This document shows, one piece after another, positions 5,296 to 64,000 of a DNA stretch of 64,000 nt; position 1 is the first letter of the stretch; every line of letters begins with the position of its first letter. Origin of the DNA: Hemiscyllium ocellatum (Eukaryota); the NCBI RefSeq assembly GCF_020745735.1, contig NC_083445.1, positions 8,928,001 through 8,992,000 of the forward strand, read 5' to 3'. The notes under the pieces are model-generated. The model did not search any database. It saw only the letters and a list, made by a program, of their open reading frames with translations, and was not told where the DNA came from. The position numbers and the translations under genes are program-made.

Positions 5296-5335
5296 GCAAA
5301 CGTTTCGTCCCCTTTCTAGGTGACATCCTCAGTGC
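5296..5335 (-). ncRNA. Minimal hammerhead ribozyme motif (PLE family B)
   Basis: GCA-CUGAGGA-U-GUCACCUAGAAAGGGGAC-GAAAC-GUU-UGC. Confidence 0.75.
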
Positions 5336-5873
5336 TTGGGAGCCTCCTGTGAAGCGCTTCTGTACTGATTCTTCCAGCATTTATAGTGGTTTGTCTCTGC
5401 TGCTTCCGGTTGTCAGTTGCTGTCTGCTGCAGTGGCCGGTATATTGGGTCTAGGTCGATGTGTTTGTTGGTAGAATCTGTGGATGAGTGCCATGCCTCTA
5501 GGAATTCCCTGGCTGTTCTCTGTTTGGCTTGCCCTATAATAGTGGTGTTATCCCAATCAAATTCATGTTGTTTGTCATCTGAGTGTGTGGCTAAGGATAG
5601 CTGGTCGTGTTGTTTCGTGGCCAGTTGGTGTTCATGGATGCGGGTTGTTAGCTGTCTTTCTGTTTGTCCTATGTAGTGTTTTGTGCAGTCCTTGCATGGG
5701 ATTTTGTACATTACGTTGGTTTTGCTCATGCTGGATATCGGGTCCTTTGTCCTGGTGAGTTGTTGTCTGAGCGTGGCTGTTGGTTTGTGTGCTGTTATGG
5801 TCGTAGTAGTCTGGCTGTCAGACTATAAATGCCAGAGGAATCAGCACAGAAGCGCTTCACAGGAGGCTCCGAA

Positions 5874-6921: not shown

Positions 6922-38914
<31,993 letters not shown>

Positions 38915-40323: not shown

Positions 40324-41197
40324 AAAAAGTGAGGTCTGCAGATGCTGGAGATCAGAGCTGAAAATGTGTTGCTGGTTAAAGCACAGCAGGTTAGGCAGCA
40401 TCCAAGGAACAGGAAATTCGACGTTTCGGGCCAGAGCCCTTCATCAGGAATGAGGAGAGGGTGCCAGGCAGGCTAAGATAAAAGGTAGGGAGGAGGGACT
40501 TGGGAGAGGGGCGATGGAGATGTGATAGGTGGAAGGAGGTCAAGGTGAGGGTGATAGGCCGGAGTGGGGTGGGGGCGGAGAGGTCAGGAAGAGGATTGCA
40601 GGTTAGGAGGGCGGTGCTGAGTTCAAGGGAATTGACTGAGACAAGGTGGGGGGGAGGGGAAATGAGGAAACTGGAGAAATCCGAGTTCATCCCTTGTGGC
40701 TGGAGGGTTCCCAGGCGGAAGATGAGGTGCTCTTCCTCCAACCGTCGTGTTGTTATGTTCTGGCGATGGAGGAGTCCAAGGACCTGCATGTCCTCGGTGG
40801 AGTGGGAGGGAGAGTTAAAGTGTTGAGCCACGGGGTGGTTGGGTTGGTTGGTTCGGGCGTCCCAGAGGTGTTCCCTGAAGCGTTCTGCAAGTAGGCGGCC
40901 TGTCTCCCCAATATAGAGGAGGCCACATCGGGTGCAGCGGATGCAATGGATGATGTGTGTGGAGGTGCAGGTGAATTTGTGGCGGATATGGAAGGATCCC
41001 TTGGGGCCTTGGAGAGAAGTAAGGGAGGAGGTGTGGGCGCAAGTTTTGCATTTCCTGCGGTTGCAGGGGAAGGTGCCGGGAGTGGAGGTTGGGTTGATGG
41101 GGGGGGTGTGGACCTGACGAGGGAGTCACGAAGGGAGTGGTCTTTGCGGAACGCTGATGGGGGAGGGGAGGGAAATATATCCCTGGTGGTGGGATTG
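40324..41197 (-). mobile_element. Neptune-type PLE 3' fragment with intact hammerhead
   Basis: Close relative of the 410-1492 element; AQHFNSPSHSTEDMQVLGLLH...RRLEEEHLIFRLGTLQPQGMNSDF. Confidence 0.9.
40416..40451 (-). ncRNA. Minimal hammerhead ribozyme motif (PLE family A)
   Basis: AUUC-CUGAUGA-A-GGGC(UCUG)GCCC-GAAAC-GUC-GAAU. Confidence 0.82.
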
Positions 41198-41435
41198 AGG
41201 TGTTGTAGTCCCTCTTCAATGATAGCGTGCAATCATTGCATAACATAGAAAAAAAAAGTCTTGCATTTAGGTAATGCTTTTCACGACTACCAAATGTCTC
41301 AGTGCTTTTCAGCCATTGAAATACGTAGAAAACAGGAGGAGCAGTGGGACATTCAACCTTTGAGCCTACTTTGCCATTCATTATGGCAGACTTTTGAAGA
41401 GTAGATACTGTTAAAATGTAGAAATTATAGCAGCT

Positions 41436-47790: not shown

Positions 47791-48165
47791 TCAGTGTTGA
47801 GTTTGTGTCTGCATAGCTTGCAACTGTTGCTCTAACCAGGCAACTACTTCAGTTCTATTGGAGGCCCTTGCTAGATCCAGTGGTGTTTGCCCACTGATGT
47901 TCTTCTGCAAAATGCTTGATCTTGGAGTCAGGTATTGGACAAGGTCCAAGTAGCCCTCTTGGGCAGCCATGTGTATTGGCAGGCACCATGCAGCATCCTT
48001 GATGTTCACGTTTGCCTTGTATTTTATCAGGACCTTCATGGTATCCAAGAAACCACTCCGGGCCACATCGTGTGCCGGAGTAAAGCCCCATCTATCCTGG
48101 ACATTTGGCTGTGCCCCGTTCTTCAACAGTTCCTCTGCAACCATTGTACTGCCCAGCATCATCAC
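47791..48165 (-). CDS. CDKN2D: CDKN2D (p19INK4d) exon 2; total protein 170 aa, ankyrin repeats
   Basis: [46 protein letters not shown]...[10 protein letters not shown]...GQTPLDLA. This is closer to p19 ([24 protein letters not shown]) than to p18, and the gene is adjacent to KRI1 as in human. Confidence 0.93.
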
Positions 48166-50864
48166 CTGGAAAGAGAAGCACAAAAACAGAGATTTAGGCT
48201 CTGAGTGTAACCAAAGGAGCTAGCCCTTTGTGGTGTGACAATTAAATCAGTCTGTGTATAGGAGGCACTGAAACAATTCACCAAGGCTTCTTCAATATTA
48301 TCTCCCAAGCTTCTGATCTGCAACTCCCAGAAGGACGAGTAGCAGATGCACACAAACACCATCACCTCCATGACAGATACCATCCCAACTTATAGATGGA
48401 TCTCTGTACACCTGCACTTTCATTCTTACTGGATCGAAATTCTTTTCCTCATTGGTGAACACTGCCTTCATTGTCTCAATTACAGCTAGAGATGAGCAAT
48501 GTCCAAATCCCAAAGATCAATACTTCAAAATTAATGTTTGTATTGAATAGCATTTTGGGGATTTATGGCTGAAATTTTTGGGACTGAACTCCACAACGCT
48601 CTCTATTTTTCTGTATAAATTATAATTTACCATGGATTGAATCCCTTGCCATTTGAGTGAGCGAAGAATACACACTGAAGAATTGGAATAGGTGATTCAA
48701 CCTCTCAAGCATGTTTAGAGTCCCTACAGTGTAGAAACAGGCCCTTCAGCCCAACTATTCAGTTACGGTTCAGCTGTACTGCAGCAAGATGGCAAACAAT
48801 AAAGATTCACCAATTGTACATATTTCCTACTTAATGGCTCTGGGGAATGGAAATTAGGCCGAACTGTATTTTTAGGGGTAACTGTGGGCTTTGGTAATAT
48901 TGGAGAGATGATTCTTGGGTTTTGGAGAGGAGCGACAACAGCATAGGGTTTATTTTTGATATTGCTGCTTGTAGAGAAGGAACCTACAATTAGACACAAT
49001 TATGGTTTCGATCATTGGTGGAATCTTGCCCGAGTAATTCAGGCAGCAGTGTGGAAAACAGGCACTAACAGATCATGTTTGGTTCCTATTGAAATTAATG
49101 GTGAGAGGGGAAAATAGAGGGGTGCAAGGTTTTAGGAAAATAAAGGGGGTGGGCATGTTAGTGGTGCACTTTAGCAACCTAAGTTTGTTACTTTGTAAGG
49201 CATCTTGCACACATCGAATTTGATTTTGTTTGAAATCAGTTTCTGGGCATGTTTGTGTGTGCCCGGCGATCTGTGTCTGTCTCCCTTTCTGTCTCACAGC
49301 TGCAGAACAATGTAAACATTCTAATCATGCATCTCTCTGACTCTCCCACAGCTGCAAGAAGATGTAGACATATGTAGACATCGCAATTACTACCTTCCCC
49401 TGTGATTGTTATGAATTTGTCTCTGTAACAGCCCCGGGGCGCAGGGCTAGTGTGAAGTCTACCATGGGAACTCAGACATTATGGTGTCAGAAAAACCTCT
49501 GCAGAAGATGAAAGCAGTCTCTTTTACGCAGCAGTGATGGATTTTCAGAATCCAACGCCTTGCAACATTCAGTCATCCTTCCACATGACAACGTACTAAC
49601 CTCAACCAAGGATTTTTGGTCAGAGGAAAGAGGAGGAAATTTGGGCACAGGGCATTACAAATCCAAAGTTTGACCTTTCCAGGAATGAAATTGGGGGATA
49701 ATGCTATGCCACGAGTGATAGAAGGTTGGCAGTGATAATTGCTCAGTCGATTAATCATTTTTAAGCTGAGGTCAAAGGATTGTTCTATTTTGCAAACTAA
49801 AAGTACTAAGGATACTGGACAAAGACAGAAATATGGAGATACCAGACAGTCGTAGATCTACAATTCCACTGAATTTAGGGTGATCGCGTGTGGTCTAATT
49901 TTGGTTCACACTGCTACTTTATGCCGTTGGTGAGAGCTGCGGGTGAGACAGAGTCCACTGTTAAATATTACTTAACACGAATGCCTAGCAACATCTTGTG
50001 AACAGCTTGGTAGGTAATATACACAACCTGCAATAATTATTCTAACCCCACCCATATTTAAAGTGTTTTTAAATATGAAACGTATCTTTACCGCTTTCGA
50101 TTTTAATTTGCAGAGGAGGAACAGTGTAAATTTAGAACAGCGATCGACAACGCGGACTGAAACCGCCCTTTTGTACACATTCCCCACTGTAAGACTCCGC
50201 CCTTCGTAGTAAAGTAACGTAAGAGTTACTGACATATTTGTCAAAGATTGTTCCTTTTCAGGGCTTTTTCTAAATTAAATCAACAATCGGATTATTTAGC
50301 TCCGTTTCCATCTCTCCAAAATTCCATCCCGCCAACTGCAGGCAAAAAATAGTTATCGGATAGAGTTTGGAGTCAGATGTCAAATTATTTCAAATCGGCT
50401 TTTCAACGTCAGCCGAAGGGGAAGGGGTCGGGGAGGCGGGGGAGGGAGCCCCTTGGCTTCATTCATAAATTGTGACGACCCCAGTAGCTCACAACCCCAA
50501 ACTGCGCCTGAACATTTTATTTTGCGTTTCAATACATCTCTGGGCGCAGTCTGGGAACGGGTTAATCTTCCGCAGCAGGTTTAACCGGCTGACATCTCCG
50601 TCACAAGCGGCATCGCAACAGTCGTTTACAAATCCCAATGTCACGCACATCCCCAACTCTGAATCTGCTGCGTTCGACAGCAACGCAGATTCCGCTAGGA
50701 CTTGCAAATTTTTACAGAATTTTTGTTACTGAAGGAGGTGAATGTAATCCTGAAAAGGGTTTCTGCCGGCTCAAACGAGTGTGATTTTAACTGGGAGGGG
50801 GGGGGGATTAAAAACAACATGCTGCTGTCTTTATCACTATTTCGAGTCGAGAGCTATTACCAAC

Positions 50865-51002
50865 CTGCAGTGCGGTTTGTCCGAATTTATTCACCGCGTT
50901 GGCGTTCACCTTTTCATCGGTCAGCAGACGCTTCACCTCTTGCCAGTCTCCCCGTACGGCAGCCTGCGACAACTTATCCCCGTCCAGTATGGTTTTGCCC
51001 AT
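50865..51002 (-). CDS. CDKN2D: CDKN2D (p19INK4d) exon 1
   Basis: [46 protein letters not shown]; phase-0 donor GTTGGT at the conserved INK4 position TALQ|VM. Confidence 0.93.
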
Positions 51003-51099
51003 ATTTATGTGTGTGATTCCCAACGTTAAATATTTGCTTTGCTTTAAGCCCTCCGCGACTGGAGGCGAAGGCAAAAGCCTACTGTTGTTGCTGCTGTAA

Positions 51100-51420
51100 T
51101 CTCTCTCCGCTTGCCGGGCAAGTGAGTTAGCCCCCACTCTAGGGAGGAGTGAAGCAGGATATGATTGACAGACGCAGCCGCCAATCAGAGTGGCGGTGTC
51201 TGCTGCCGCACCGGGCAACATTCTAAATCGCGACTCAACGTTCGGAGGCCGGGCCAGCCGACCAATCAGGGACGAGATGGCCCGAAAGGTGCAATAACAT
51301 ACTGACGTTGGGTCTTTGTGACGTTATCTGTTTTGTTACTTTCACGCTGTGGACGCACGCGCGGCTCCAGAGGAGCTGACAGCTCCCCCGGGGCGACAAT
51401 CGTTGCAAATTTGTGTTGCA
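51100..51420 (-). promoter_or_regulatory. CDKN2D CpG-island promoter with CCAAT boxes and an E2F-like site
   Basis: CCAATCA at 51181 and 51262; TTTCGGGCCA on the minus strand near 51278-51287; high CpG density. Confidence 0.6.
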
Positions 51421-51970
51421 CTGAGTGGCCGAAGCAGCGGCTAGCCTTACATTACCCCCTTCCCAGCTAAAACGGAACCTCAGGAAGAGTCACTGGACTC
51501 GAAACGTTGACTCTGTTTATCTCTCCACAGATGCTGCCAGAGCAGCTGAGTTTCTCAAGCAATTTCTGTTTTTTTTAGATTTCATTTGGGCTCATGTGGC
51601 ACAGTGGGAATGTCTTTGCCTCTGAGGCAGGAGGCCCCATATTTAAGTCTGTCCTTCAGGGGCATGCCATAAAACATTTCTTTACAGGTTGATTATATCT
51701 AATTTCCTCAGGTCAGACAGCACAAGAAGAGTCTGGTCCCACAGTCACTAAGTATTTAGCCAACCTGCTAATAATTCCATCCTTTTTCTTTCTTTAAAAA
51801 GTCAAATCTGTTCATACATATCTTGGGCATGTGAGATTTAAATCCAGGCCGAGAGGTAAGGACTCTACTACTGTACTATAAGATGCTTTAGTCCATTTTT
51901 AGTCTTGAATTTTCACAGGAAATTCAAGAAAGCCTGGAGGCCCGTGAACAGTGTTGTGTCACAAGGATTG

Positions 51971-52932
51971 AGTCATAGAGATGTACAGCATGGAAGCAGA
52001 CCCTTCGGTCCAACCCGTCCATGCCGACCAGATATCCCAACCCAATCTAGTCCCACCTGCCAGCACCTGGCCCATATCCCTCCAAACCCTTCCTGTTCAT
52101 ATACCCATCCAAATGCCTCTTAAATGTTGCATTCTACCAGTCTCCACCCCTTCCTCTGGCAGCTCATTCCATACATGTCCCACCCTCTGAGTGAAAAAGT
52201 TGTCCCTTAGGTCTCTTTTATCTTTCCCCTCTCACCCTAACTATGCCCTCTATTTCTGGACTCCCCAACCCCAGGGAAAAGACTTTACCTATTTACGCTA
52301 TCCATGCCCCTCATAATTTTGTAAACCTCTATAAGGTCACTTCTTAGCCTCCGACGCTCCAGGGAAAACAACCCCAGCCTGTTCAGCCTCTCCCCATAGG
52401 TCAAATCCTCCAACTCTGGTAATATCTTTGTAAATCTTTTCTAAACCCTTTCAAGTTTCACAACATCTTTCTGATAGGAAGGAGACCAGAATTGCATGCA
52501 ATATTCCAACAGTGGCCTTGACCAGCAACACATTTGCAGCTGTGATCTCCAGCATCTGCAGACCTCATTTTTTACTACAACAGTGGCCTAACCAATGTCC
52601 TGTACAGCTGCAACATGACCTCCCAACTCCTGTACTCAGTACTCTGACCAATAAAAGAAAGCATAACAAACACCATCTTCACTATCCTATCTACCTGTGA
52701 CTCCATTTTCAAGGAGCTATGAACCTGCACTCCAAGGTCTCTTTGTTCAGCATGACTCGCTAGGACCTTACCATTAAGTATGTACGTCCTGTTAAGATTT
52801 ACTTTCCCAAAATGCAGCACCTCACATTTATCTGAATTAAACTCCATCTGCCACTTCTCAGCCCATTGTCCCATCTGGTCCAGATCCTGTTGTAATCTGA
52901 GGTAACCCTCTTCGCTGTCCACTACACCTCCA
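51971..52932 (-). mobile_element. Young CR1 LINE 3' fragment
   Basis: DSEEGYLRLQQDLDQMGQWAEKWQMEFNSDKCEVLHFGK; very similar to 10630-11488. Confidence 0.92.
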
Positions 52933-52972
52933 GGCTAAGATAAAAGGTAGGGAGGCTTGGCTACTCTCTCTC

Positions 52973-53008
52973 ATTCCTGATGAAGGGCTTATGCTCGAAA
53001 CGTCGAAT
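52973..53008 (+). ncRNA. Minimal hammerhead ribozyme motif (PLE family A) in a solo terminal repeat, about 52933-53100
   Basis: AUUC-CUGAUGA-A-GGGC(UUAU)GCUC-GAAAC-GUC-GAAU. Confidence 0.82.
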
Positions 53009-53133
53009 TCCCTATTCCTGAGATGCTGCCTGGCCTGCTGTGCTTTGACCAGCAACACATTTTCAGCTGTGATCTCCAGCATCTGCAGACCTCATTTTTT
53101 CCTGCGTACAGGACCTTGAGATTGGTTGAGGAA

Positions 53134-53993
53134 TGGTAGATCAAATTTAATTACATATGAGGTGTTGCATTTTGGAAAGACAAATCAGGGCAGAACTTAT
53201 ACGCTTAATGGTAAGTTCCCAGGAAGTGTTGCCAAACACAGAGACCTGAGAGTGCAGGTTCATAGTTCCTTGAAAGTGGAATCACAGGTGGACCATGTAG
53301 TAAAGAAGGCATTTGGTATGTTTACTTGTATTGGGAAGTGCATTGAGTATAGGAGTTGCGTTGTCATATTGCAGCTGTACAGGACATTGATTCAGCCATA
53401 TTAGAATACTGTGGTCTCCTTGCTACAAGATAGATGTTATGAAACTTGAAAGGATTCAGAAAAGATTTACAAGAATGTTACCAGGATTAGAGGCTTTGAA
53501 CTTTCAGGAGAGGCTGAATAGTGGCTACTTTCCCTGGAATGTCGGAGGCTGAGGGGTGACCTTATAGAGGTATATAAAATCATAAGGGACATGGATAGCA
53601 TAAATAGCCTAAGGTCTTTTCCCAGGGAATGGGAGTCCAAAACTAGAGGGTATAGGTATAACATCAGAGGGGAAAGATTTAAAAGGGATCTAAGAGGCAA
53701 TTTTTTTACACAGAGGGTGTTGGAATGAGCTGCCAGAGGACGTGGTAGGGGCTGGTACAATTTACAACATTTTAAAAGGCATTTGGATGGTTATATGAAG
53801 AGGAAGGGTTTAGAGGGATTTGGGTCAACTGGTTGCAAATGGGACTAGGGGTAAAAAATGAGGTCTGCAGATGCTGGAGATCACAGTTGAAAATGTGTTG
53901 CTGCAAATGGGACTAGATTAATTTAGGATAGCTGGTTGGCATGAAGGAGATGGACCTAAGGGTCTGTTTCTGTGCTGTACATCTCTGTGACTC
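53134..53993 (+). mobile_element. CR1 LINE 3' fragment
   Basis: EVLHFGKTNQGRTYTLNGK...; same 3' tail. Confidence 0.9.
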
Positions 53994-56261
53994 TGGCTGG
54001 CCCAGGCTTATCCACGCCCATAGCAATGTGATTGGTTTTCACCTGCCTTCTCAAATGACCAGCAAGCCACTCAGTTGTATCAATCGTTAGGAAATTACAA
54101 AATAAGAAACGAACAGGACATGGACTGCAGCTGTTCAATAAGGCAGCTGACCACCACTTTCTCAAGGACAACTGACAGCAGGCAATAAATGCTGCCCCCA
54201 CGAGTAAATAAAAAAAATCCAGTGGTCTCGCCTATTGTTATTCACACTCGTCCCCTTGTGTTGAATTCGCCAGTTTTAACAATGGTTATAGTGACTGGCA
54301 CTGCCTCTTCGACCGACCAGCATCTTGTCGCGTTCGGGTGTTAATGTAATTACCTGAGTTTTAAAATTTTATTTTTATATCCCTGAGCCTCAATCGTTGA
54401 AATAGCTGCAAGGTTTTCCAGACGCAGTGTGTTAATTGGAATAACAACCCGTAATGGTTTGGAGGACAAACAGGAATTGCTGAAGAAACTCGGCAAGTCT
54501 GGCAGCGTTTGTGGGGAGAGCGAGAAAAAACAGTGTGTTTATGGTCCCGTATCACTTCTGTCGAAGCAGCTGCCAGCCCTGCTGAGTTTCTCCAGGGCTT
54601 CTTGTCTGTATTTCAGACCTCGAGCATCCCCGGGCTTTTGGTTACATAAACATGGAGTCTATACCCTTGCCGACTTCGGGAAAGTTGTGTCAAAAGGAGC
54701 GCCTTTCATTTCTCTCTCACGCACACTCGGTATAATTTATATGGTGTAACTCGGGTGTACAGACTCCCAGATAACTCTGAAATGATGTCCTGTGTTCTGG
54801 GGTGTCTCCGGTACGCTCTGTTACCAAGAAGACCAAACTGCAGAATTCATCTGAACTTAGCCAAAACCGTAGGATGACTAAACGAACTTTAGTCTGCAGT
54901 TTGTGATGTACCTACATAATTGCAAACGGACATCATTCGGTCACAATATAAAGAAATATCTCCTCACTTTAAGCTCTGTATTGCGACTGGGTTACAGGTT
55001 CAATTCTTTCGAAATGTGGAGTTTCAGTCATCAAACTTTCAGCTTTTCATGAAGATGTGTACTCAAACTCCACCCAGCCAAGGCTTGAGCCCAAAACAAA
55101 GACACTGAGTGGCTCGCCAGCATTGATTGTTAACTGTGTCATTGCGCCCACAATGGCAAAATCGTCTCAAGGTAATAAGGGAGGGATTTCCAAAGAAGCC
55201 GAGGGAGGAAGTTGGAGATTGATCATTGGCGCGCATCCTTGTTCTCAAGAAGTGTGACATTATTTGGAAGTTCTAGTTTTTTTTTGTGATTTTGATTTTT
55301 TTTTAAAATCCCAGTCCCATCTGATGACTCTTCGCCTAAAATTCGACAAAGAAGAGTTTGTTGTCTTGACTACACCCCGCTTCAACCCACAGGACTGGAA
55401 ATGCACGAATTGCTGATTCATTTCATGACTGTTTACAAGCTAAGGAGCCCAGGGTGACCGCAGCGCAGCCGCTAATGTTTACCATACGGACTGAGGCCAT
55501 TCAGCCCGCCTTGTCCGTGTGCCGGCCGATCGCTGCAGCAATCTAAATAGAAACAAATGCATCTTCCCCGGGCACCAAATATCCCACCTCCTCACCACGA
55601 CTCCCTTCAAAAACGACAGTTGCTCCCTTGCAGTAAGTTGCAGGTTCAACAGCCCGCGCCGTGCAAAACGAGTATTCTCCTGCTTAACTCACAGATCACC
55701 CATTACTTCACCTCTCCCTCTCTCTCTCTCTCTGCCGCCATCCCTTCCCCCAGCCAGTCCGGGGGAACTAGATCTCCCTTCATTATTATTCCAAACATTT
55801 CAATTTGAGAAGATGGCAGTAATAGATTAGATAAGGGAATCGAGAGAGCTGGGGTTAATGCTTTGGGAATGCGGGTTCGGACTTTGAAATTAGTGAATTG
55901 GCAACCGGAATTTGAAAATTAGCCTTCGTCAGGCGATCATGAAATTGCCATGTATTAAAAACCTACCTGGTTTAATTAAGGGAGGAAATCTGCTAACTAT
56001 CCTTGGTGTGGCCGCCATGTGACTCCAGTCTCATTCTTAACCTCCCTCTGCAATGGGCAGTGAAGGATTGTCAACACAGGATGGCCTTTTCACATCCAAT
56101 GAACCAACACATATTTTTAAAAACGCTCTATCATATCTATTCTCTATTTTCACGAGTGGGTACGCTCCCGATTCCCTCTTCAAATCAGACCCGGCACAAA
56201 TCCTTGGCCCTTTTCTCGTAAACTGCGAAGTTGTACTTTCAGTCAATAAAAGCCGAAAGAA

Positions 56262-56420
56262 CCGCGGATGCTGTAATTCGAAAACAAAAACAGAAATTGC
56301 TGAAAAAAAGATCACCTGCGGAGAAAAGTCAGAGTTAACGTTAAGGGTCGAGTGGCCCTTCCTCAGAACACTGATTTCTCTCCTCAGATGCTGAGCTTTT
56401 CCAGCAATTTCTGTTTTCAT
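56262..56420. mobile_element. Short palindromic PLE-derived element (family D); related copies near 2150-2330, 30320-30560, 45630-45700, 51478-51580, 54465-54640 and 60958-61140
   Basis: Shared ...ctctccacagatgctgccagacctgctgagtttctccagcaatttctgtttt motif, often as inverted arms, with degenerate CUGANGA...GAAACGUU. Confidence 0.7.
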
Positions 56421-57089
56421 TTGTGCTCTCAGTCAACAATGTCCCAATGTCTGGAACACCCTCCAACTTCACCGCCCTTCCCCCATTCCCATCAACTTAT
56501 TCTGTCCTCCCCGCTCATGCGCTTAGAATTGTCCAACTGCTTATGTCGGTCCTTGCAAAATCCATGGTTCCGGCGTTTCCAGACATTGTTTGTTGTGGAA
56601 ACCTAAAGATGCAAAGTTCCCTTTCGACAAAACTCGGCGCTTCGCAATATTCAACATCATCACTGTTTCTTTCCACCTGTGACATGACCTCTCTGTGGTC
56701 AGCGCCCTATTTACCAAACCCACAATGATTATTTACCTCAGATATTTTCAAAAGTAATTGTGTGTGTGAAGGTGAGATGTGAGAAAAAAAAACGCACTTT
56801 ACAAATGCAATTGTAATTATGGAGGCTTTTAAAAATAAACAAACTGGAAACGTGTAACAAAAAAAATTACTCTGAAACCTATGAGGTAAACCTTGTTGGA
56901 CTTATTCCATACTGTTTGGAGCCACTTTGCTCTGTTGAATCCACGTTTAAGCACACTGATTTATGAGTGTAAACTATATAAGCAAAGCTTGCTTATACCA
57001 GGAGGTGTCAGCTCCTTTATGAATGGCGTTGTCTGGTTTGCCATTCAGTTTTTAAGGCTTTTTCTGCACCTCCTCCTCTTCCTGTTATT

Positions 57090-57206
57090 GTTGCTACGGA
57101 CGCTTCTCAACCCGGTGAACCATCTTGGCGGTCGTTTATATATATTTTTAAAAAATCATACTTCTCATTGCATTTAATCATAGGCGAGTCGGCCTTCCGA
57201 GTAAGT
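57090..57206 (+). promoter_or_regulatory. Putative promoter and non-coding first exon of the plus-strand gene, with an X-box-like motif
   Basis: GTTGCTACGGACGC 57090-57103; CpG-containing, ATG-free stretch ending at donor CGA|GTAAGT (57200/57201). Confidence 0.45.
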
Positions 57207-57395
57207 ACAATGTGCAGTGTAATCCACGTAGTGACAATGAAATTCTGTTTAAACAGCACAATCTCATTTCTTCCCAGATTAGTTTCCAATCAGTTCCCGG
57301 AAAACCCCATGCAAAAGGCAACTATTCAGAATTCCAGGTTAAAACGGATATCAGCACACAGTCTTTTTACAGTTACTCCAAATCCCACAGAGGTA

Positions 57396-57700
57396 AGATT
57401 AGATTCGATTACCTACAATGGAAACAGACTCTTGGCCCAACAAGTCCACACCAAGCCTCCAAAGGAGTAACCCACCCAAACCTATTTCTCTCTGACTAAT
57501 GCACCTAACACTATGGGCAATTTAGCGTGGTTAAATCACCTGCCTGCACATCTTTGGACTGTGGGAGGAAACCGGAGCACCCACGCAGACATGGGGAGAA
57601 TGTGCAAACTCCATACAGATACTTGCCTGAGGCTGGAATCGAACCTGGGTCCCTGGCCCTGTGAGGCAGCAGTACTAACCACTTGAGCCACCATGTAGCC
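57396..57700 (-). mobile_element. V-SINE (HE1-like)
   Basis: Same head, V core and tail. Confidence 0.88.
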
Positions 57701-58929
57701 AAATAAGTTCAAATTCGTCCAAATGGGTTGGTCCCATTCAGAGCACTATAAATCAGAGCCTCATTTCTGTCCGTAAACTTACAGTATAAACAGTGTCAGG
57801 GGTGCTGAGATTTATTCATTTTTTTTCACAGGATGACCCATCAGTAATTGCCCTTGAGAAGGTGTTGAGGGCCATTAAATAGGCTGCTGGGCTATTTCAG
57901 AGTCAACCACTTTGTGATGGGTCTGGAGTCATCTATGGGCAAGGGGGGGGGGAGCAGATTTCCTTAAAGAAAATCAATGACCCAGATCAGAAGTCTCATG
58001 ATTGCTGCAGTTTGCAAGGTATTCCCAGTTAACATCCAATGACCCCTGTATGTGTGACCCCATCTTGTAAGGATAGGGCTGGATCAAAGAGCAGTATTGG
58101 GCATGCCATAGAATTATTAAGCTGCTTTTGCATTCCAACTATAGCATGCACCTGTTAAACTGACAGAACATTAGCACAACAGCATTGACTAGCTTCTGCT
58201 GACCTAATAATATTAATATTCAGCCCAAAAAAAACACCTCCACAAACCACTGAAACTCTCCCTTTGCATGTTCACACTGAAAAGTAATTCTCACTGCGTT
58301 GGCGGGACCTGTTTCTGCAAACTCCAGTGTGGTCGATGACTGATTTATCTGATATTTCATGATGTTTTTCTGCTCAAAGTGTCAAATGTGGTCTGGAGTG
58401 TAAGACAGGAAAATGGTGAAGAAGTTTCATCACTAATTGTGGGAGCTTGCTGTACACATTGTTTCTTCAGTTACAGCCATGATTACACTGGACAAAAACT
58501 CTGATGGCTGAATGAGACTCATTGAGACATTCTGGAATTGTGCAAGGTGCATATTGGATATATAATATTGCAAGAAGAGTCATAGATCAGGGCACTTTAG
58601 TTTATTGTGGCTGTGACAGTCAGCAGCTAATTATTCTCTTGTATGCAATGGCAATTCAAGTTCTCATCTAAACAGTTCTCAAATGTTTTGAGGGTTGCTA
58701 CTTCTACCAGGCTTTTATGCACTGAGTTCCAAATACCCACCACCCATTGGGTATAAATGAAATCCTAAAATTGCCTTTAAACCTCATGGTCCTTACCTAC
58801 AAGCTGTGCCCCTAGTTATTTACCCATCTTCGAAGCGGAATTGTTTATCTCCATCTATGCCTCTCATACTTTTGTGCACTTTTCCAGTTGTGAACACAGT
58901 CTGTCTTACCTTTGACAGTGAAACTCACT

Positions 58930-58954
58930 ATGACTGAGATCTTAAAAGCTACAG
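58930..58954 (+). CDS. Uncharacterised plus-strand gene, first coding exon (exon 58919-58954)
   Basis: Acceptor tcttacctttgacag; actATGa start context; MTEILKAT; phase-1 donor CAG|GTAACC. Confidence 0.55.
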
Positions 58955-59065
58955 GTAACCAATCCAACACAGACTTGGAAAGTGGTTCTAGGCTTATGTA
59001 CAGCCCAATGGGAGAGGCTGCGTACCGATAAGGAGAGACTTTGGCATTGGGCTATCTTTTAGGAA

Positions 59066-59191
59066 TAAAAAGTGAGGTCTGCAGATGCTGGAGATCAGAG
59101 CTGAAAATGTGTTGCTGGTTAAAGCACAGCAGGTTAGGCAGCATCCTAGGAACTGGAAATTCGACGTTTCGGGCCAGAGCCCTTCATCAGG
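59066..59191 (-). mobile_element. Solo PLE terminal repeat (family A); hammerhead core intact at 59159-59191 but 5' strand of stem I truncated
   Basis: Nearly identical to 40324-40448; CUGAUGA-A-GGGC(UCUG)GCCC-GAAAC-GUC. Confidence 0.8.
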
Positions 59192-59269
59192 TAGCAGGGT
59201 ATTGTACAAAAATAGATAGTATATTAAACCCCCTTCACCCACACACTAGAATCATCACAGCAATTTGTT

Positions 59270-59560
59270 GGATACACAGCTGTGTGTCAGAGATCTATGG
59301 ACAGCACTGGACACTTCCTCTACCAGGATACCCGCAAGAGAGATATAAAGATTGTGGGTGACAGCTGGAGGGCAGTCACTGAGAGCAGCGATCTCTGGAG
59401 GTTGACTGTTTGGAAGGTAGTGAGCAGAAACAGAAATCGCAGCTGGCTGAGAAGAGAGTCCAATGAAAACAGAGTCCAGAGAATCATGCACCTTCTCAGC
59501 CCATTATCTTCCTCTGCTGATTGGGGCTCCTGAGTCACACCAGCCAATGCCTAACATGGG
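59270..59560 (+). mobile_element. RTE-like LINE C-terminal remnant
   Basis: STGHFLYQDTRKRDIKIVGDSWRAVTESSDLWR resembles the RTE C-terminal GRP..R.KD..KRD.K....W......R..WR motif. Confidence 0.55.
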
Positions 59561-59669
59561 GGTGACTAACTGTATTATGAGATTGAAGACAACAGGAATG
59601 TACAGCCCAGTATTTTTCTGCAGGAATGGAAAATTGTGCTTTCAAAACAAAACTGACCCACTTCTCAGA

Positions 59670-60737
59670 TAGTTGATTTGTTGCAACAGTAATAGAAATC
59701 TGGGTACAAAATTGGCTAAATAGGAAGCAGACAGTAATGCTCAATGGATATTTTTAAGGCTAGAGGAAAGTTTGCACTGGAGTTCCCCACAGGTCCGTTG
59801 CTCTACCCGATATGTATTAATGATTAAGATCCTGGTGTGCAGGGGATGGTTTCAAAGTTTGCAGATGTCTCTAAATTTGGACAATTGTCAGCTGTGAGGA
59901 AGACAGTATGGAACTTAAAAAGACATTTGACAGTTTGGTAGAGTGGGAAGGTGGGTGGCTGATGAGGTTCCATGCAGAGAAATATGAGGTGATGCACTTC
60001 GGTTGGAAGAAGATTGAAAAACAACTTAAAATGGATGGTTAAAAAACTAAAGTGGTGTGGAAGCAGAAGAAGCTGGGTGTATATATGCACAGATCATTAA
60101 AGGTGGCAGGACAGGTGAAGAGACCAGTTAAGAAGATATACACTGTTCTCAAATTTTTAAATAGGGTATAGAGTACAGGAGCAAGGAGATGATATTGAAC
60201 TTGTAAAAAGGCACTTATTAGACTTCAGTTGGTGTACTGTGTCCACTTATGGGCACCACATTATAGGAAAGCTATGAATGCATTGAAGACAGTGCAGAAG
60301 TGATTTACAAGAATGGTTCCAGGAATGAGAGACTTCAGTTGTGAAGATAAATTGAAGAAGTTGGGACTGTTCTCCTTGGAGAGAAGCAGGCTGCGAGGAG
60401 GTCTGACAGAGGTTTTCAAAATCATGAGCAGGATGGATAGAGTAGATAGGAAGAACCTGTTCCTGTTTGTAAGATAGAAGAGAGAGGGCATAGATTTAAA
60501 GTGATGTGCAAATGAAGCAAGGGTGATGTCAGGAAAAACATTTTATGAATGAATGTTAGGGTATGAAATGCACTGCCTGGCAATGTAGTGGAGGAAGGTT
60601 CAATTGTGGCATTCACAAGGGTATTGGATGACTATTTGGAGAGTAACTGTGTGCAGAGATTGGCACTGAGTAAGAGAACCAGTGTAGGTACGATGGGTCA
60701 AATGGCCTCTTTCTGTCCCATAATAATTCTATGATTA
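59670..60737 (+). mobile_element. Older CR1 LINE fragment
   Basis: Degenerate RT C-terminal sequence (aagtttgcagatg, gaggtgatgcacttc) and gggtcaaatggcct...ttctatgat tail. Confidence 0.8.
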
Positions 60738-61381
60738 CTTCTAAGTCAAACTACGACTTGTAGAGCAGAATATTCCTATGTTTGTGGATTCATTTGACGT
60801 TCCAATCTCAATTTCACAATAAAATTCCTTAACATTGCAGTGCTATAATTATGAAGACACTGGGAACATTTGTGACACAGCACCACCTAGAGTCTCTGTT
60901 CTTAACTTCACCTGCATTCATTTATTTTGCAGTCTAAATACAGTGCAGATTTATTAAGTTCTGAGGCAGAGTCACCGGACCCGAGACTTTAACTTTGATT
61001 CCTCTGCAGAGGTGCTGCCAGACCTGCTGAGCTTTTCCAGCATCTTCGGTTTTTGTTACCGATTTATTAGTGCTGAGTGCGTGATGAATGCAGGAAATGC
61101 TGAACAGGTCAGGCCGGTATCTGTATATAGAGAGAAACAGAATTAATTGTTGCAGGTCTGTGACTTTTCGCCTGAGCTATTGGTTACTACTTTGAAACTG
61201 ACAGTTACTTCCGGACTCATGCAGAAAAGTTTCAAAATCAGAAGTGACTATCAATGTGTCTAGGCTTTTCATAGGTTACAAAGTAGAGGTTTAAATGGTT
61301 GCTATCTCCCCTGCAATCAATGAAAGAAAGTATCCCTCTCCATAATGAGGTCTTGCTGTGAAATAAACCTTTTAAAACTTG

Positions 61382-61594
61382 AAAATCACACAACACCAGG
61401 TTAGAGTCCAATATGTTTAATTGGAAGCACTAGCTTTGGGAGCACCGCTCCTTCATCAACTCCACAACCACCTGATGAAGGAGCGGCGCTCCCAAAGCTA
61501 GTGCTTCCAATTAAATTTATTGGATTATAACCTGGTGTTGTGTGATTTTTAACTTTGTACAGCCCAGTCCAACACCGGCATCTCCAAATCATCT
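61382..61594. mobile_element. Palindromic PLE terminal-repeat element (family C) with hammerhead-like motif
   Basis: Inverted arms 61382-61458 and 61473-61549; CAC-CUGAUGA-A-GGAGC(GGC)GCUCC-CAAAG-CUA-GUG; a 3' tail fragment of the same family lies at 266-340. Confidence 0.8.
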
Positions 61595-62324
61595 TTGAAA
61601 AGTTGGTTCTGTTTCTTGCTTGCAGATGCCGTCTGACTTGCTGAGAATTTCAAGCATTTTCTGATTTAACCTGAAAAAAAATGGCTACACTTTGTTGAAC
61701 AAGGTGTAACTGGGTTTATGACAGTGCTCAAAGTTCCAGAATTACTGCCGAACCTCCTCACTGGTCTGAAAAGCTACTCCTATATTTGTCGATTGTTAAG
61801 CGTCTTTGTAACAATAAAGGCAAATGTGCACTTTTTAAAACGTACAGGTCTGCCACTCACAATTGTCTATATGATTTCCTGAAAATTTAAATTACAAGCA
61901 AAGCAAAATTTAAACTTAAAGTGAAGGATACTAAGTGCCATTAAGTCATAGTTTGCTGTAAATGTTTGGCCCTTTACCCACTTGCTGTTATTGCTGTCGC
62001 AGCAAGCCGCACCCTTGACTTTGTACCAGGTTTAAATTGTCATCGGGAAGAGAAGTTCAGAGATCATCAGGTCATTGTGGGTGGCTTTCTTTGAGATACT
62101 TGCAAGCACCTTTGACAAGACTGCCATATCCAGGACATTATAGTGGGAACACAATGTAGGTTAAAGGGGCTTATTATTGCTATTCAAAGATCCTCAATCT
62201 ATTTTCTACAATCCACGGGGAATGCCTTTTCAGCCTGAGAAAGTGTATTTTAACACACTGAAAGACTTAATGGAGCTTGTCTGCATTAATTTTGACTGCA
62301 TTTTTGTCTCCTCCTCCCCTGAAG

Positions 62325-62356
62325 GTGATGGAAGAAATCAAGATGATAAGCAGAGG
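62325..62356 (+). CDS. Uncharacterised plus-strand gene, second coding exon
   Basis: Strong polypyrimidine tract + gaag; (G)DGRNQDDKQR; phase 1 in and phase 0 out, matching both neighbouring exons; donor GTAGGG. Confidence 0.6.
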
Positions 62357-63310
62357 GTAGGGGAGTCCTGCACGAAGGGGTACAATCTCAAGATCAGAGC
62401 CACATCAATGACATGCATTACAATTTTGTTAAGGCACCTGTAATACATCACCCCAGTCTTGTAGTAATGTTGGACTCTCCCACAAGTGGAAACATCAATA
62501 AATTAGTTACCCAAGATTTTTGGACTTACTGAATGGAATGACTGGCAATGGGGGAGTGAAGTTTATGGGTTGAAAGGAGTGGTGAGGAGGAGTGGAGAAC
62601 AGAAATGAGTTTAAAACAATGTAAATAGGTGTTTAGGAAACTTGTTATCAGCAAATAAATAATCAAATCTCCAACCCATTGGAGAAGTGCACTTCAGTGA
62701 TGAAATGCAATACCAAATTCCTGAGAGCTAAATGCCGTTGAAACAGGGAGTAGCATGGCATGAGGGCCACAGACTAGACAGAGAGCTCCAATGAGAACCT
62801 TTGAACATATCTAGTTCACAAACGAATACCAGACTTTTGTTCTATTGAAGACAGAGAAGCCGAGAGAGTGAATCAACACCAGACAGGTCCAAGTCCTGGG
62901 TTGCCAGAGTTAAGAGTTATTGGGAGGACACCAAAACAGCTGTTTGAAATGATGAACACTTCAAAATAAGCTGACAATAAATGTGCTTGACCATCTTCCC
63001 CGACTGGTGAAATGAACGATTTTTGGTGTAAGGTATATTAGACAGCACTTGGTGCATCTCCGACAGATCCTGGCAAAGTATATTTTCACGAGATTCTTTT
63101 GTTCATTTAAAGAAGCCTTTCTGTTTTTAACCAGTCCTCTGTATAATTCTGCAATTGTAAATTGAAAGATGGCCTGTACTTGTAATATGGAGACTCTATA
63201 ATGATTGTAGGATGGTATCCCAGCAAAAATATGTTTTTATTTTATGCGGGCAAGCATAATTGATAAAAGAGGTGCTCAAAATATTTTCTTTTTTAAATGT
63301 TTCATCATAG

Positions 63311-63522
63311 GAAATGTCAGAACAAATGCTCATGAGGCCCAAAGCCCCTCAGTCCAGTGACTTGAATTTAGCTCGAAGACTAAACAAGCTTTGGAAATAC
63401 ATTGATGCAACGGGCCTTCAGAAAAGCATGGAGGACCTGTGTGCCCAGCTGCTGAACAGGACAGAGCTGCCATGCAACCCATACCTGGGGTTTGTCCATC
63501 GACTGCACCAGCAGGCAGAACG
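63311..63522 (+). CDS. Uncharacterised plus-strand gene, exon with RIIa/Dpy-30-like dimerisation/docking motif; gene continues beyond the window
   Basis: Acceptor tttcatcatag, donor CG|GTAAGT; EMSEQMLMRPKAPQSSDLNLARRLNKLWKYIDATGLQKSMEDLCAQLLNRTELPCNPYLGFVHRLHQQAE. Confidence 0.8.
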
Positions 63523-64000
63523 GTAAGTGGCAACAACAATTTGCATTTATACATCAGCTGTGATGCAGGGCATTCACAGGGGCAGTTTAGGAAACAAAAT
63601 TTGACACCAAACCACAAAAGGAGGCATTCAGATTGACCGCCAAATGCTTGATAAAAGAGACCAGTTTTAAATGGTGATGGAAAGGAGAAGAGAGAGGAAG
63701 GAGGAAGGGCTTAGAGGCAGACTTCCAAGGCTGGGGTCTGGTCAGCTAAAGACACAGCCACCAATTTTGAAGTGATAAAATTGAGCATGTGTCAAAAACC
63801 CAAACTGGAGGAGTTCAGAGATTTCTGAGGTTTAACGGGCGAGAGCAATAGAGAGAGGTATAGCCATGAAGTGATTTCAAAATAAGGAGGAAGATCTTCA
63901 AATTGAGGTATAGCTGGATTTTCATTGCAGTGAACAGGCTTATTGACTATAAAGTAAAGTCACCACAGTCCCAGAGGGCTGCTCTTTCATTGGAGAGAGA

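What the first reader, a model, noticed from the sequence alone, without database searches (positions are those of the whole stretch)
58919..63522. Unrecognised plus-strand gene encoding an RIIa/Dpy-30-like docking motif, divergent from CDKN2D
Seen: three exons (58919-58954, 62325-62356, 63311-63522) have good splice sites and matching phases (1, 0). They give MTEILKATGDGRNQDDKQREMSEQMLMRPKAPQSSDLNLARRLNKLWKYIDATGLQKSMEDLCAQLLNRTELPCNPYLGFVHRLHQQAER. The two small exons are not evident from the ORF track. Known: the pattern Y(I/L)...GL...(M/L)E.L...LL.....P.NP...F...L fits the X-type four-helix D/D fold of PKA RIIa, Dpy-30 and ropporin, common in axonemal and sperm proteins. In human, the gene on this side of CDKN2D is AP1M2, which this is not. 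Inference: an uncharacterised, possibly ciliary or AKAP-binding protein that mammals lack at this locus.
Basis: partly seen in the sequence, partly recalled or inferred. Interest (0 to 1): 0.7.

Follow-up and report, generated by a model that had tools for sequence, protein, structure and literature searches.

The report
Shark gene's first exon, not docking motif
The 70-codon open reading frame is the genuine first coding exon of an already annotated but uncharacterised shark gene, conserved from molluscs to salamanders and not found in mammals. Its supposed "docking motif" is the first piece of a twice-repeated unit whose predicted fold resembles giant-virus nucleotidyltransferases.

Summary
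Exon 63311-63522 (+) is real. It matches residues 29-99 of RefSeq XP_060710871.1 at 100% (uncharacterized LOC132835806, Hemiscyllium ocellatum, 1171 aa). The window's geometry also fits that assembly's gene table exactly.

Most orthologues start at the ATG at 63314, three bases into the exon. Their splice sites and phases are no better than chance. Annotated 5' exons near 57.0-57.4 kb splice straight to 63311.

The Dpy-30/RIIa reading is not supported. There was no Pfam hit in 32 domain copies, no profile hit to solved D/D domains, and no fold match.

The helix-helix-LPxNPY-helix element opens a long unit that is duplicated in tandem within the protein (hhalign E 1.9e-22). In the AlphaFold model each unit is an alpha/beta core followed by a helical bundle. 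Its closest solved match is Megavirus Mg662 nucleotidyltransferase (Z 16.4-17.6). The canonical catalytic carboxylates are not recognisable.

The family is unnamed. It occurs in sharks, rays, basal ray-finned fishes, a salamander, amphioxus, a hemichordate and molluscs. No mammalian member was found.

The parts
63311..63522 (+). Acceptor AG at 63309-63310, donor GTAAGT from 63523; the exon ends in phase 2.
   Evidence: Searches show the sequence and translation; tblastn of P0027 residues 29-99 gives 100% identity; phmmer hits to 18 proteins, best E 2.5e-23; two probable RNA runs hold 0.58 of the sampled words of 63250-63600, which is the share expected if they hold the exon but not its flanks.
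63314..63316 (+). Conserved start codon (ATG).
   Evidence: Orthologues from Mustelus, Chiloscyllium (2 species), Pristis and Leucoraja start at this aligned position; paddlefish, sturgeon and Pleurodeles models start within one residue of it.
63359..63520 (+).
   Evidence: HMM envelope covers residues 16-69; alignment A2, with P53/N55/P56/Y57 invariant; predicted helices at 17-33, 35-47 and 57/58 onward.
57309..57392 (+). Part of a 5' exon read as a 28-aa N-terminal extension in RefSeq isoform X1. Its donor GT at 57393 is spliced directly to 63311. Probably 5' UTR.
   Evidence: P0027 residues 1-28 match at 100%. One search shows the sequence; the distance from the Ank gene to the CDS start, 6307 bp, matches the window exactly. 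The extension is absent from other orthologues.
57019..57200 (+). Alternative or upstream 5' exon with a GTAAGT donor at 57201, joined to 63311 in a Chiloscyllium punctatum model. Not a continuous ORF in this window, so probably non-coding.
   Evidence: P0031 residues 1-56 match in two different frames. One search shows the sequence; run X1 holds 0.11 of the words of 56800-57560.
58919..58954 (+). Unsupported and probably intronic.
   Evidence: Its peptide is in no homologue. Its site scores are no better than 36 other candidates.
62325..62356 (+). Unsupported and probably intronic.
   Evidence: Same as for 58919-58954.
54000..57500 (.). CpG-enriched zone (observed/expected 0.6-0.8) that ends just after the 5' exons. 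Probable promoter region of the gene, separate from the CDKN2D CpG island at about 50000-51750.
47791..51002 (-). Neighbouring CDKN2D-like gene: two coding exons encoding ankyrin repeats.
   Evidence: ORFs; Pfam Ank_2 E 3.7e-19; 170-aa Ank gene, 3.2 kb, on the minus strand upstream of LOC132835806.

Best explanation
The ORF at 63311-63522 is the first coding exon (start codon at 63314) of the epaulette-shark gene LOC132835806. The gene spans about 70 kb and encodes 1142-1171 aa. Its annotated CDS begins about 6.3 kb from the CDKN2D-like gene, head-to-head, and it runs far beyond the window. Non-coding or weakly coding 5' exons at about 57.0-57.4 kb splice directly to 63311.

The protein is an ancient, unnamed bilaterian protein built from two tandem copies of one long unit. 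Each unit begins with a helix-helix-LPxNPY-helix element, and the exon in this window encodes the first such element. The element continues without a linker into an alpha/beta domain and then a helical bundle.

In the predicted structure each unit has the shape of a Pol-beta-type nucleotidyltransferase core plus helical domain. The closest solved structure is Megavirus Mg662, and the closest predicted ones are Mimivirus L544-like proteins.

Inferred function: an intracellular nucleotide-binding protein of nucleotidyltransferase ancestry. Because the canonical carboxylate triad is not recognisable, it is probably non-canonical or catalytically inactive. It would then act as a binding or scaffolding module, somewhat like the inactive units of OAS2/OAS3. 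It is not an AKAP-type docking protein.

Shown: the exon, gene identity, start codon, family distribution and internal duplication. Model-based: the fold. Inferred: the function.
For: Gene identity:
- tblastn of P0027 gives 100% identity at 57309-57392 and 63311-63523.
- The locus table of GCA_020745735.1 has a 170-aa Ank gene on the minus strand ending 6307 bp before the CDS start. This reproduces window coordinates 51002 and 57309.

Homology and start codon:
- phmmer of the exon peptide against 1.84 billion representatives gave 18 hits. The best matches begin at residue 1 of proteins of 995-1120 aa.
- Source names are all 'uncharacterized'.

Expression (indirect):
- Two probable RNA data sets hold 0.58 of the words of 63250-63600. 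An exon-only transcript would hold 0.57.

Duplication:
- An HMM finds two copies of the element per protein, and three in one protein.
- hhalign of unit 1 against unit 2 gives probability 99.5%, E 1.9e-22, over 280 columns.

Fold:
- The full-length AlphaFold2 model has pLDDT 74.4 and pTM 0.72, with the repeated order helices, alpha/beta, helical bundle.
- VIA-align gives 4xul Z 17.6 (rmsd 3.8, 278 of 365 residues aligned), 4ams Z 17.2 and 4amq Z 15.8.
- In the unbiased search of 48,161 chains, 4xul_A is top at Z 16.4, and the next hit is 12.6.
- AFDB clusters named nucleotidyltransferase match unit 2 (E 1.5e-5 and 7.4e-4) and unit 1 (E 1.5e-3, TM by hit 0.52).
- Giant-virus and virophage models match at probability 1.0.
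- Bacterial proteins of ~440 aa match model residues 90-565 at TM 0.64-0.67.
- The unit 1 core matches Pol lambda, TdT, Rel and FAM46C at Z 7-8.
Against: - No sequence-level link to any nucleotidyltransferase family. Pfam and NCBIfam scans of whole proteins and of single units are empty, and a family profile against PDB sequences finds nothing.
- No conserved [DE]h[DE] pair lies on any predicted strand. The strand expected to carry it reads T-V-Q-V-L in unit 1, and unit 2 has only one invariant Glu, E767.
- The fold evidence rests on one predicted model built from 17 sequences.
- Foldseek E-values against PDB were weak (0.04-0.06).
- Language-model look-alikes are helical scaffold proteins, not nucleotidyltransferases (all below 0.9).
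- No reads could be laid, so splice junctions and tissue of expression are unverified.
Confidence: 0.72

Rival explanations
1. One reading: the exon encodes an RIIa/Dpy-30-type dimerisation/docking (D/D) domain. It would form an X-type four-helix bundle and dock the protein to AKAP-like amphipathic helices, for example in cilia or sperm.
For: There is a superficial motif resemblance: a helix, then a Pro-x-Asn-Pro turn, then a helix, as in Dpy-30. This comparison is from my own knowledge of Dpy-30 and was not tested. The predicted isolated domain is helical, with a loop at LPxNPY.
Against: - No Dpy-30 (PF05186) or RIIa (PF02197) match in the window peptide or in any of 32 family copies, even at E<=10.
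- A profile of 32 copies against all PDB sequences, a set I take to include DPY30 and PKA R-subunit chains, gave no such hit at E<=10.
- Foldseek and VIA-align searches with the domain model gave no D/D entry; the best Z was 3.2.
- The element is duplicated together with the ~230 residues that follow it.
- The second copy is internal, at about residues 614-667.
- In the full-length model, residues 51-53 of the motif pair as a beta bridge and helix 57-74 runs straight into the alpha/beta domain.
Confidence: 0.05
2. The protein is a scaffold subunit of some multiprotein complex, with no evolutionary link to nucleotidyltransferases. The Mg662 resemblance would then be convergent or an artefact of the predicted model.
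For: Language-model look-alikes are NCKAP1, GEMIN4, MED24, CYFIP, INTS2, strumpellin and NELF subunits, at scores of 0.84-0.89. The helical bundles at 372-566 and 914-1095 give many Z 9-12 matches to four-helix bundles. No catalytic motif is present.
Against: All look-alike scores are below the 0.9 lead threshold, and the tool itself flags the family as probably wrong. About half of each unit is alpha/beta, not helical. The Mg662 match covers 78% of the solved chain and stands about 4 Z units above the helical-bundle background. Independent predicted-structure libraries return proteins named nucleotidyltransferase for both units.
Confidence: 0.18
3. The ORF is a chance open frame, a transposon fragment or a pseudogene exon.
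For: The surrounding intron is full of retroelement fragments.
Against: The exon is single-copy in the window. It is 100% identical to a full-length RefSeq model. It is conserved at 32-67% identity from hemichordate, mollusc and amphioxus to other sharks, with invariant residues. It has no match to transposon proteins.
Confidence: 0.01

Closest known systems
RefSeq LOC132835806 (Hemiscyllium ocellatum, XP_060710871.1) and its orthologues, e.g. LOC122552236 (Chiloscyllium plagiosum), LOC144507598 (Mustelus asterias), LOTGIDRAFT_152822 (Lottia gigantea)
   Same: It is the same gene: 100% identity over both window exons and matching locus geometry. The orthologues share the start codon, the two LPxNPY elements and the overall length.
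   Different: Nothing differs. The gene is simply uncharacterised everywhere, with no Pfam domain and no paper found for six of the orthologue identifiers searched.
Megavirus chilensis Mg662 and the Mimivirus L544-like nucleotidyltransferase family (PDB 4XUL, 4AMS, 4AMQ)
   Same: The predicted unit 2 (model residues 587-1095) superposes on Mg662 at Z 16.4-17.6, rmsd 3.8-3.9 A, with 278-284 of 365 residues aligned. Predicted models named L544-like or nucleotidyltransferase match both units.
   Different: - Sequence identity is only 8-9%, and no sequence method links them.
- The animal protein has two units in tandem.
- The canonical acidic catalytic residues are not recognisable.
- Each unit carries a conserved LPxNPY turn, and I could not check whether Mg662 has one.
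2'-5'-oligoadenylate synthase 2 (OAS2) and other tandem nucleotidyltransferase-fold proteins
   Same: The architecture is similar: two tandem core-plus-helical-domain units. OAS2 is the best Swiss-Prot structural hit over the whole model.
   Different: The match is weak (E 6.4e-3, probability 0.69, TM 0.12-0.17). There is no OAS or Mab21 Pfam signal. This is an analogy of architecture only.
Dpy-30 motif (PF05186) and PKA RIIa dimerisation/docking domain (PF02197)
   Same: A short helical element with a Pro/Asn-Pro turn between two helices.
   Different: There is no HMM, profile or fold match. The loop is longer. The element is not a free terminal module but part of a duplicated larger unit.

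Membership tests
Dpy-30 / RIIa D/D domain | Significant match to the Pfam Dpy-30 (PF05186) or RIIa (PF02197) model | tested here: not met
   hmmscan of the window peptide and of 32 family copies at E<=10 matched neither family. The only hits were scattered chance matches such as SWIB at E 0.09.
Dpy-30 / RIIa D/D domain | Sequence relationship to solved D/D domains (DPY30, PKA RI/RII and others) | tested here: not met
   hmmsearch with the 32-copy profile against all PDB chain sequences at E<=10 returned only ferritin (0.28) and MTA1 (0.65).
Dpy-30 / RIIa D/D domain | Helix-turn-helix fold that superposes on D/D domains | tested here: not met
   The AlphaFold2 domain model has pLDDT 79.5. Foldseek against PDB found nothing at E<=0.001. 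VIA-align against 48,161 chains gave a best Z of 3.2, with no D/D entry among the 50 listed. Small helical hairpins are hard to match, so this is weak negative evidence.
Dpy-30 / RIIa D/D domain | Homodimerisation into an X-type four-helix bundle | tested here: inconclusive
   The two-copy complex prediction returned 'no answer' (score 0.01, partner pLDDT 41). This is not evidence either way.
Dpy-30 / RIIa D/D domain | Stand-alone terminal module separated from the rest of the protein | tested here: not met
   The element is duplicated together with the ~230 residues that follow it (hhalign E 1.9e-22). A second copy sits internally at about 614-667. No low-confidence linker follows it in the full-length model.
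Dpy-30 / RIIa D/D domain | Binding of an amphipathic helix from an AKAP-like partner | not testable with these tools
   Needs a binding assay.
Pol-beta-type nucleotidyltransferase fold (Mg662 / L544-like) | Alpha/beta core plus helical domain that superposes on a solved member | tested here: met
   4xul gives Z 17.6 and 16.4, rmsd 3.8-3.9 A, with 278-284 of 365 residues aligned, and is the top hit of the unbiased search. The query is a predicted model (pLDDT 74.4, pTM 0.72).
Pol-beta-type nucleotidyltransferase fold (Mg662 / L544-like) | Catalytic pattern hG[GS] ... [DE]h[DE]h ... h[DE]h on core strands | tested here: not met
   I overlaid conservation on the predicted secondary structure. An invariant Gly (G109 in W-G-L-P-S, G704 in F-G-L-x-S) could be the G[GS] turn. 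No conserved acidic pair lies on any strand. Unit 1's following strand reads T-V-Q-V-L, and unit 2 has one invariant Glu (E767). The mapping was done without a residue-level structural alignment, so a non-canonical site is not excluded.
Pol-beta-type nucleotidyltransferase fold (Mg662 / L544-like) | Sequence-profile match to a curated nucleotidyltransferase family | tested here: not met
   Pfam on whole proteins (E<=0.01) and on single units (E<=10), plus NCBIfam, gave no nucleotidyltransferase family.
Pol-beta-type nucleotidyltransferase fold (Mg662 / L544-like) | Nucleotide binding or transfer activity | not testable with these tools
   Needs recombinant protein and NTP-binding or transfer assays.
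Orthologous group of LOC132835806 (unnamed bilaterian family) | Full-length collinear homology with two LPxNPY elements and a shared start | tested here: met
   For the part inside the window: 100% identity to P0027. For the family: alignments A1 and A3 are collinear over ~1000 residues, with 21 invariant columns in A3 (40 in A1), and there are two HMM copies per protein.

The most novel reading that the evidence does not exclude
Animals outside the amniotes may retain an ancient two-unit relative of the giant-virus Mg662/L544-type nucleotidyltransferases. It would still bind or transfer nucleotides through a non-canonical site. It might act as a sensor or signalling enzyme comparable to OAS2 or cGAS-like proteins, and it would have been lost on the line to mammals.
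Probability: 0.12. Interest if true: 0.75.

Novelty: new variant of a known kind. Interest (0 to 1): 0.4.

Why it matters
As a gene call this is ordinary. RefSeq already lists the locus, and the docking-motif idea does not hold.

The interest lies in the family. It is a ~1100-residue protein conserved from molluscs, a hemichordate and amphioxus to sharks, basal ray-finned fishes and a salamander. It has no name, no Pfam domain and no paper, and no mammalian member was found in these searches.

The predicted architecture is new information, as far as these libraries show. It consists of two tandem units shaped like Mg662/L544-type nucleotidyltransferases, each opened by an invariant LPxNPY element. 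This makes the family experimentally approachable.

If the units bind nucleotides, the family would add an animal branch to a fold otherwise solved only from a giant virus. It would also be a candidate ancient gene lost in amniotes.

Tried and rejected
- **Reads.** No splice junction could be checked.
- **Short-protein homologue search.** The search for homologous proteins with the 70-aa peptide found nothing. This is a length-window effect, because the real relatives are ~1000 aa.
- **Profile homologue search.** Repeating it with family alignment A1 added no new members.
- **Homodimer prediction.** The complex prediction of the N-terminal element returned 'no answer', which is not evidence for or against binding.
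- **Language-model atlas searches.** The exon peptide gave no usable hit. The whole protein and residues 600-1100 gave only sub-threshold helical-scaffold look-alikes.
- **PDB by sequence.** Searches with the peptide, the domain profile and the family profile found nothing meaningful.
- **NCBIfam.** No hits.
- **Bacterial-type scans.** Promoter/terminator and tRNA scans were irrelevant for this eukaryotic locus.
- **Literature.** Searches for orthologue identifiers, for Mg662 and for L544 found no paper on this family or on the Mg662 structure.
- **Earlier findings of this scan.** Nothing near this place or under related words.
- **Rejected ideas.** I rejected a chance ORF, transposon or pseudogene. 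I also rejected a bidirectional promoter shared with CDKN2D, because two separate CpG-rich zones lie 3-6 kb apart.

Full report
**1. What is in the sequence**

- 58919-58954 holds an ATG at 58930 and ends before a GT at 58955.
- 62325-62356 follows an AG and a strong pyrimidine tract and ends before a GT at 62357.
- 63311-63522 follows an AG at 63309-63310 and ends before GTAAGT at 63523.

The third stretch is a 70-codon open frame with its own ATG at 63314. All three are single-copy in the window.

**2. The third exon is a real coding exon of an annotated gene**

A phmmer scan of the 70-aa peptide against 1.84 billion representative proteins gave 18 hits at E<=0.001. The best were proteins of 995-1120 aa whose match starts at their residue 1 (E 2.5e-23 and 2.3e-12).

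The sources call every one of them 'uncharacterized' or 'hypothetical'. The taxa are:
- sharks: Mustelus, Chiloscyllium (2 species), Hemiscyllium, Scyliorhinus
- rays: Pristis, Hypanus, Leucoraja
- basal ray-finned fishes: paddlefish, sturgeon, bichir and reedfish, gar
- a conger eel fragment
- the salamander Pleurodeles
- amphioxus, the hemichordate Ptychodera, and the molluscs Lottia and Liolophura

The Hemiscyllium ocellatum protein XP_060710871.1 (P0027, LOC132835806 isoform X1, 1171 aa) maps to the window at 100% identity. Residues 1-28 fall on 57309-57392 and residues 29-99 on 63311-63523.

The gene table of that assembly shows a 170-aa ankyrin gene on the minus strand, 3.2 kb long, ending 6307 bp before the CDS start. 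This reproduces the window's CDKN2D-like exons (47791-51002) and the ATG at 57309 exactly.

The window is therefore this locus of the epaulette shark. The gene's CDS range is about 70 kb and is followed by an acyl-CoA dehydrogenase gene. Only its 5' end lies in the window.

**3. Start codon and the 5' exons**

Orthologues from Mustelus, both Chiloscyllium species, Pristis and Leucoraja begin at the position of the ATG at 63314. The paddlefish, sturgeon and Pleurodeles models begin within one residue of it.

The 28-residue extension of isoform X1 comes from 57309-57392 (donor GT at 57393). A different extension in a C. punctatum model comes from about 57019-57200 (donor GTAAGT at 57201). Neither is shared between species. 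The second is split over two frames in this window. These are most likely 5' UTR exons, and both are joined directly to 63311.

A CpG-enriched zone at 54000-57500 ends just after them. It is separate from the CpG island over CDKN2D exon 1.

**4. The two mini-exons**

Their peptide appears in no orthologue or model.

I ran a crude consensus scan of the intron 57400-63300, with thresholds at or just below their site scores. It found 54 acceptors, 56 donors and 36 candidate exons of 20-80 nt. It also found 131 chains of an ATG-bearing mini-exon plus a second mini-exon that stay open into exon 3. Good-looking sites and matching phases for exons of 32-36 nt are thus expected by chance here.

I could not test them with reads. 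I worked beside those places afterwards.

**5. Indirect evidence of expression**

Two data sets guessed to be RNA, from the same organism as the DNA holders, hold 0.58 of the sampled 31-mers of 63250-63600. DNA data sets hold 1.00. A spliced transcript containing only the 212-nt exon would hold (212-30)/(351-30) = 0.57.

One of the two also holds 0.11 of the words of 56800-57560, which is consistent with a short 5' exon. This is suggestive but is not proof of the junctions.

**6. Test of the Dpy-30/RIIa reading**

- Pfam gave no Dpy-30 or RIIa hit for the window peptide.
- It gave none for any of 32 aligned copies of the element, even at E<=10 (alignment A2).
- A profile of the 32 copies against every PDB chain sequence gave only ferritin and MTA1 at E 0.3-0.7.
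- An AlphaFold2 model of the element (pLDDT 79.5; helices 17-33, 35-47, 58-68) matched nothing in Foldseek/PDB.
- The same model reached only Z 3.2 in an all-against-representatives VIA-align search, with no D/D domain listed.
- A two-copy complex prediction gave no verdict.

More telling is the context. An HMM of the element finds a second copy at about residues 600-670 of every full-length member, and a third in one protein. A profile-profile comparison of residues 1-345 with residues 603-1000 gives probability 99.5%, E 1.9e-22, over 280 columns.

The element is thus the opening of a long unit that was duplicated as a whole. In the full-length model, residues 51-53 (the L-P-x of the motif) form a beta bridge. 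Helix 57-74 leads without a low-confidence linker into an alpha/beta domain. That is not how RIIa or Dpy-30 modules are built.

**7. What the protein looks like**

The full-length model was built on the C. plagiosum orthologue, which is 98% identical overall in alignment A3, using 17 sequences. It has pLDDT 74.4 and pTM 0.72.

| Element | Unit 1 | Unit 2 |
|---|---|---|
| Opening helices | 17-74 | 614-667 |
| Alpha/beta domain | 90-318 | 685-905 |
| Helical bundle | 372-566 | 914-1095 |

Structural matches:
- Foldseek against PDB ranked Megavirus Mg662 (4xul, 4ams) first, at weak E-values but probability 0.98. TENT5/FAM46, Pol mu/TdT and OAS1 ranked lower.
- VIA-align on those candidates gave Z 17.6 (rmsd 3.8 A, 278 of 365 residues), 17.2 and 15.8 for 4xul, 4ams and 4amq over model residues 585-1095. 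It gave Z 7-8 for the unit 1 core against Pol lambda, TdT, Rel and FAM46C.
- In the unbiased search of 48,161 representative chains, 4xul_A was again first at Z 16.4. The next entries were generic four-helix bundles at 12.6 and below.
- AlphaFold DB clusters returned a whole-length uncharacterised relative (E 4.7e-59, TM 0.79) and two further uncharacterised proteins (E 2.1e-29 and 3.5e-17). They also returned entries named 'L544-like nucleotidyltransferase' or 'Nucleotidyltransferase' for unit 2 (E 1.5e-5, 7.4e-4) and for unit 1 (E 1.5e-3, TM by hit 0.52).
- The viral library returned giant-virus and virophage proteins at probability 1.0.
- The ESM Atlas returned bacterial hypothetical proteins of ~440 aa at TM 0.64-0.67 over model residues 90-565.
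- Among Swiss-Prot models the best whole-length hit was OAS2, itself a tandem of two such units, but only at E 6.4e-3. No human protein matched convincingly.

**8. Limits of the nucleotidyltransferase reading**

No sequence method links the family to any nucleotidyltransferase family.

I overlaid conservation on the predicted strands. It shows an invariant Gly after a short strand in both units, which is a possible G[GS] turn. It shows no conserved acidic pair on any strand. Unit 1 reads T-V-Q-V-L where the pair would be expected, and unit 2 has a single invariant Glu (E767).

I therefore say that the protein looks like a tandem Mg662/L544-type nucleotidyltransferase. I do not file it as an active member. 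The likeliest mechanism is nucleotide or ligand binding, or scaffolding, by inactive or non-canonical units. That step is inference.

**9. Verdict**

Its central claim, a D/D docking fold, is not supported, and neither is the word 'unrecognised'.

What remains of interest is an unnamed, ancient bilaterian family with a predicted tandem giant-virus-like nucleotidyltransferase architecture.

Noticed in passing
window 6922-7443 (-): A 173-aa lysine- and glutamate-rich ORF ending in a basic tail. It looks to me, from memory only, like the C-terminal exon of KRI1. That would give the order KRI1, CDKN2D, LOC132835806, as in the human KRI1-CDKN2D-AP1M2 interval. Pfam gave no hit.
   Followed up: partly
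window 466-1341 (+), 5316-5729 (-), 14231-14873 (-), 40391-41381 (-): Several proline-rich ORFs share a Cys/His-rich '...YIGxTxRxL...EH' type segment and resemble each other. They are probably copies of one retroelement family (Penelope-like GIY-YIG, by my recollection). Pfam gave no hit for the three tested.
   Followed up: partly
window 10643-11017 (+), 52575-52922 (-), 53126-53404 (+), 59908-60042 (+), 60313-60477 (+): LINE reverse-transcriptase tail fragments, recurring as '...W.MEFN.DKCE.LHFGK...'. One gives a weak RVT_1 hit at E 0.007. Two of them lie inside the first intron of LOC132835806.
   Followed up: partly
window 59085-59219 (+) and 52858-53082 (-): Two ORFs translate to closely similar peptides starting M-L-E-I-(R/T)-A-E-N-V-L-L-V-K-A-Q-Q. 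This points to a dispersed repeat (SINE or LINE 5' part) present in both orientations near the gene's 5' end.
   Followed up: no
The tool states that this is no evidence of anything. The places lie in the first intron, within overlapping ORFs at 57511-57712 that look like a tRNA-derived SINE-type repeat. I did not examine or search them.
   Followed up: no
locus table of GCA_020745735.1 and GCA_004010195.1, outside the window: In both Hemiscyllium and Chiloscyllium the gene downstream of LOC132835806 is a 442-aa acyl-CoA dehydrogenase on the same strand. It may be GCDH, which is also on human 19p13; that is my recollection and was not tested.
   Followed up: no
P0011 (MetaClust UPI00078A3440, 1689 aa): One family member carries three LPxNPY elements. 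The second and third are nearly identical (residues 633-698 and 925-988). This is either a recent extra duplication of the unit or an assembly artefact.
   Followed up: no
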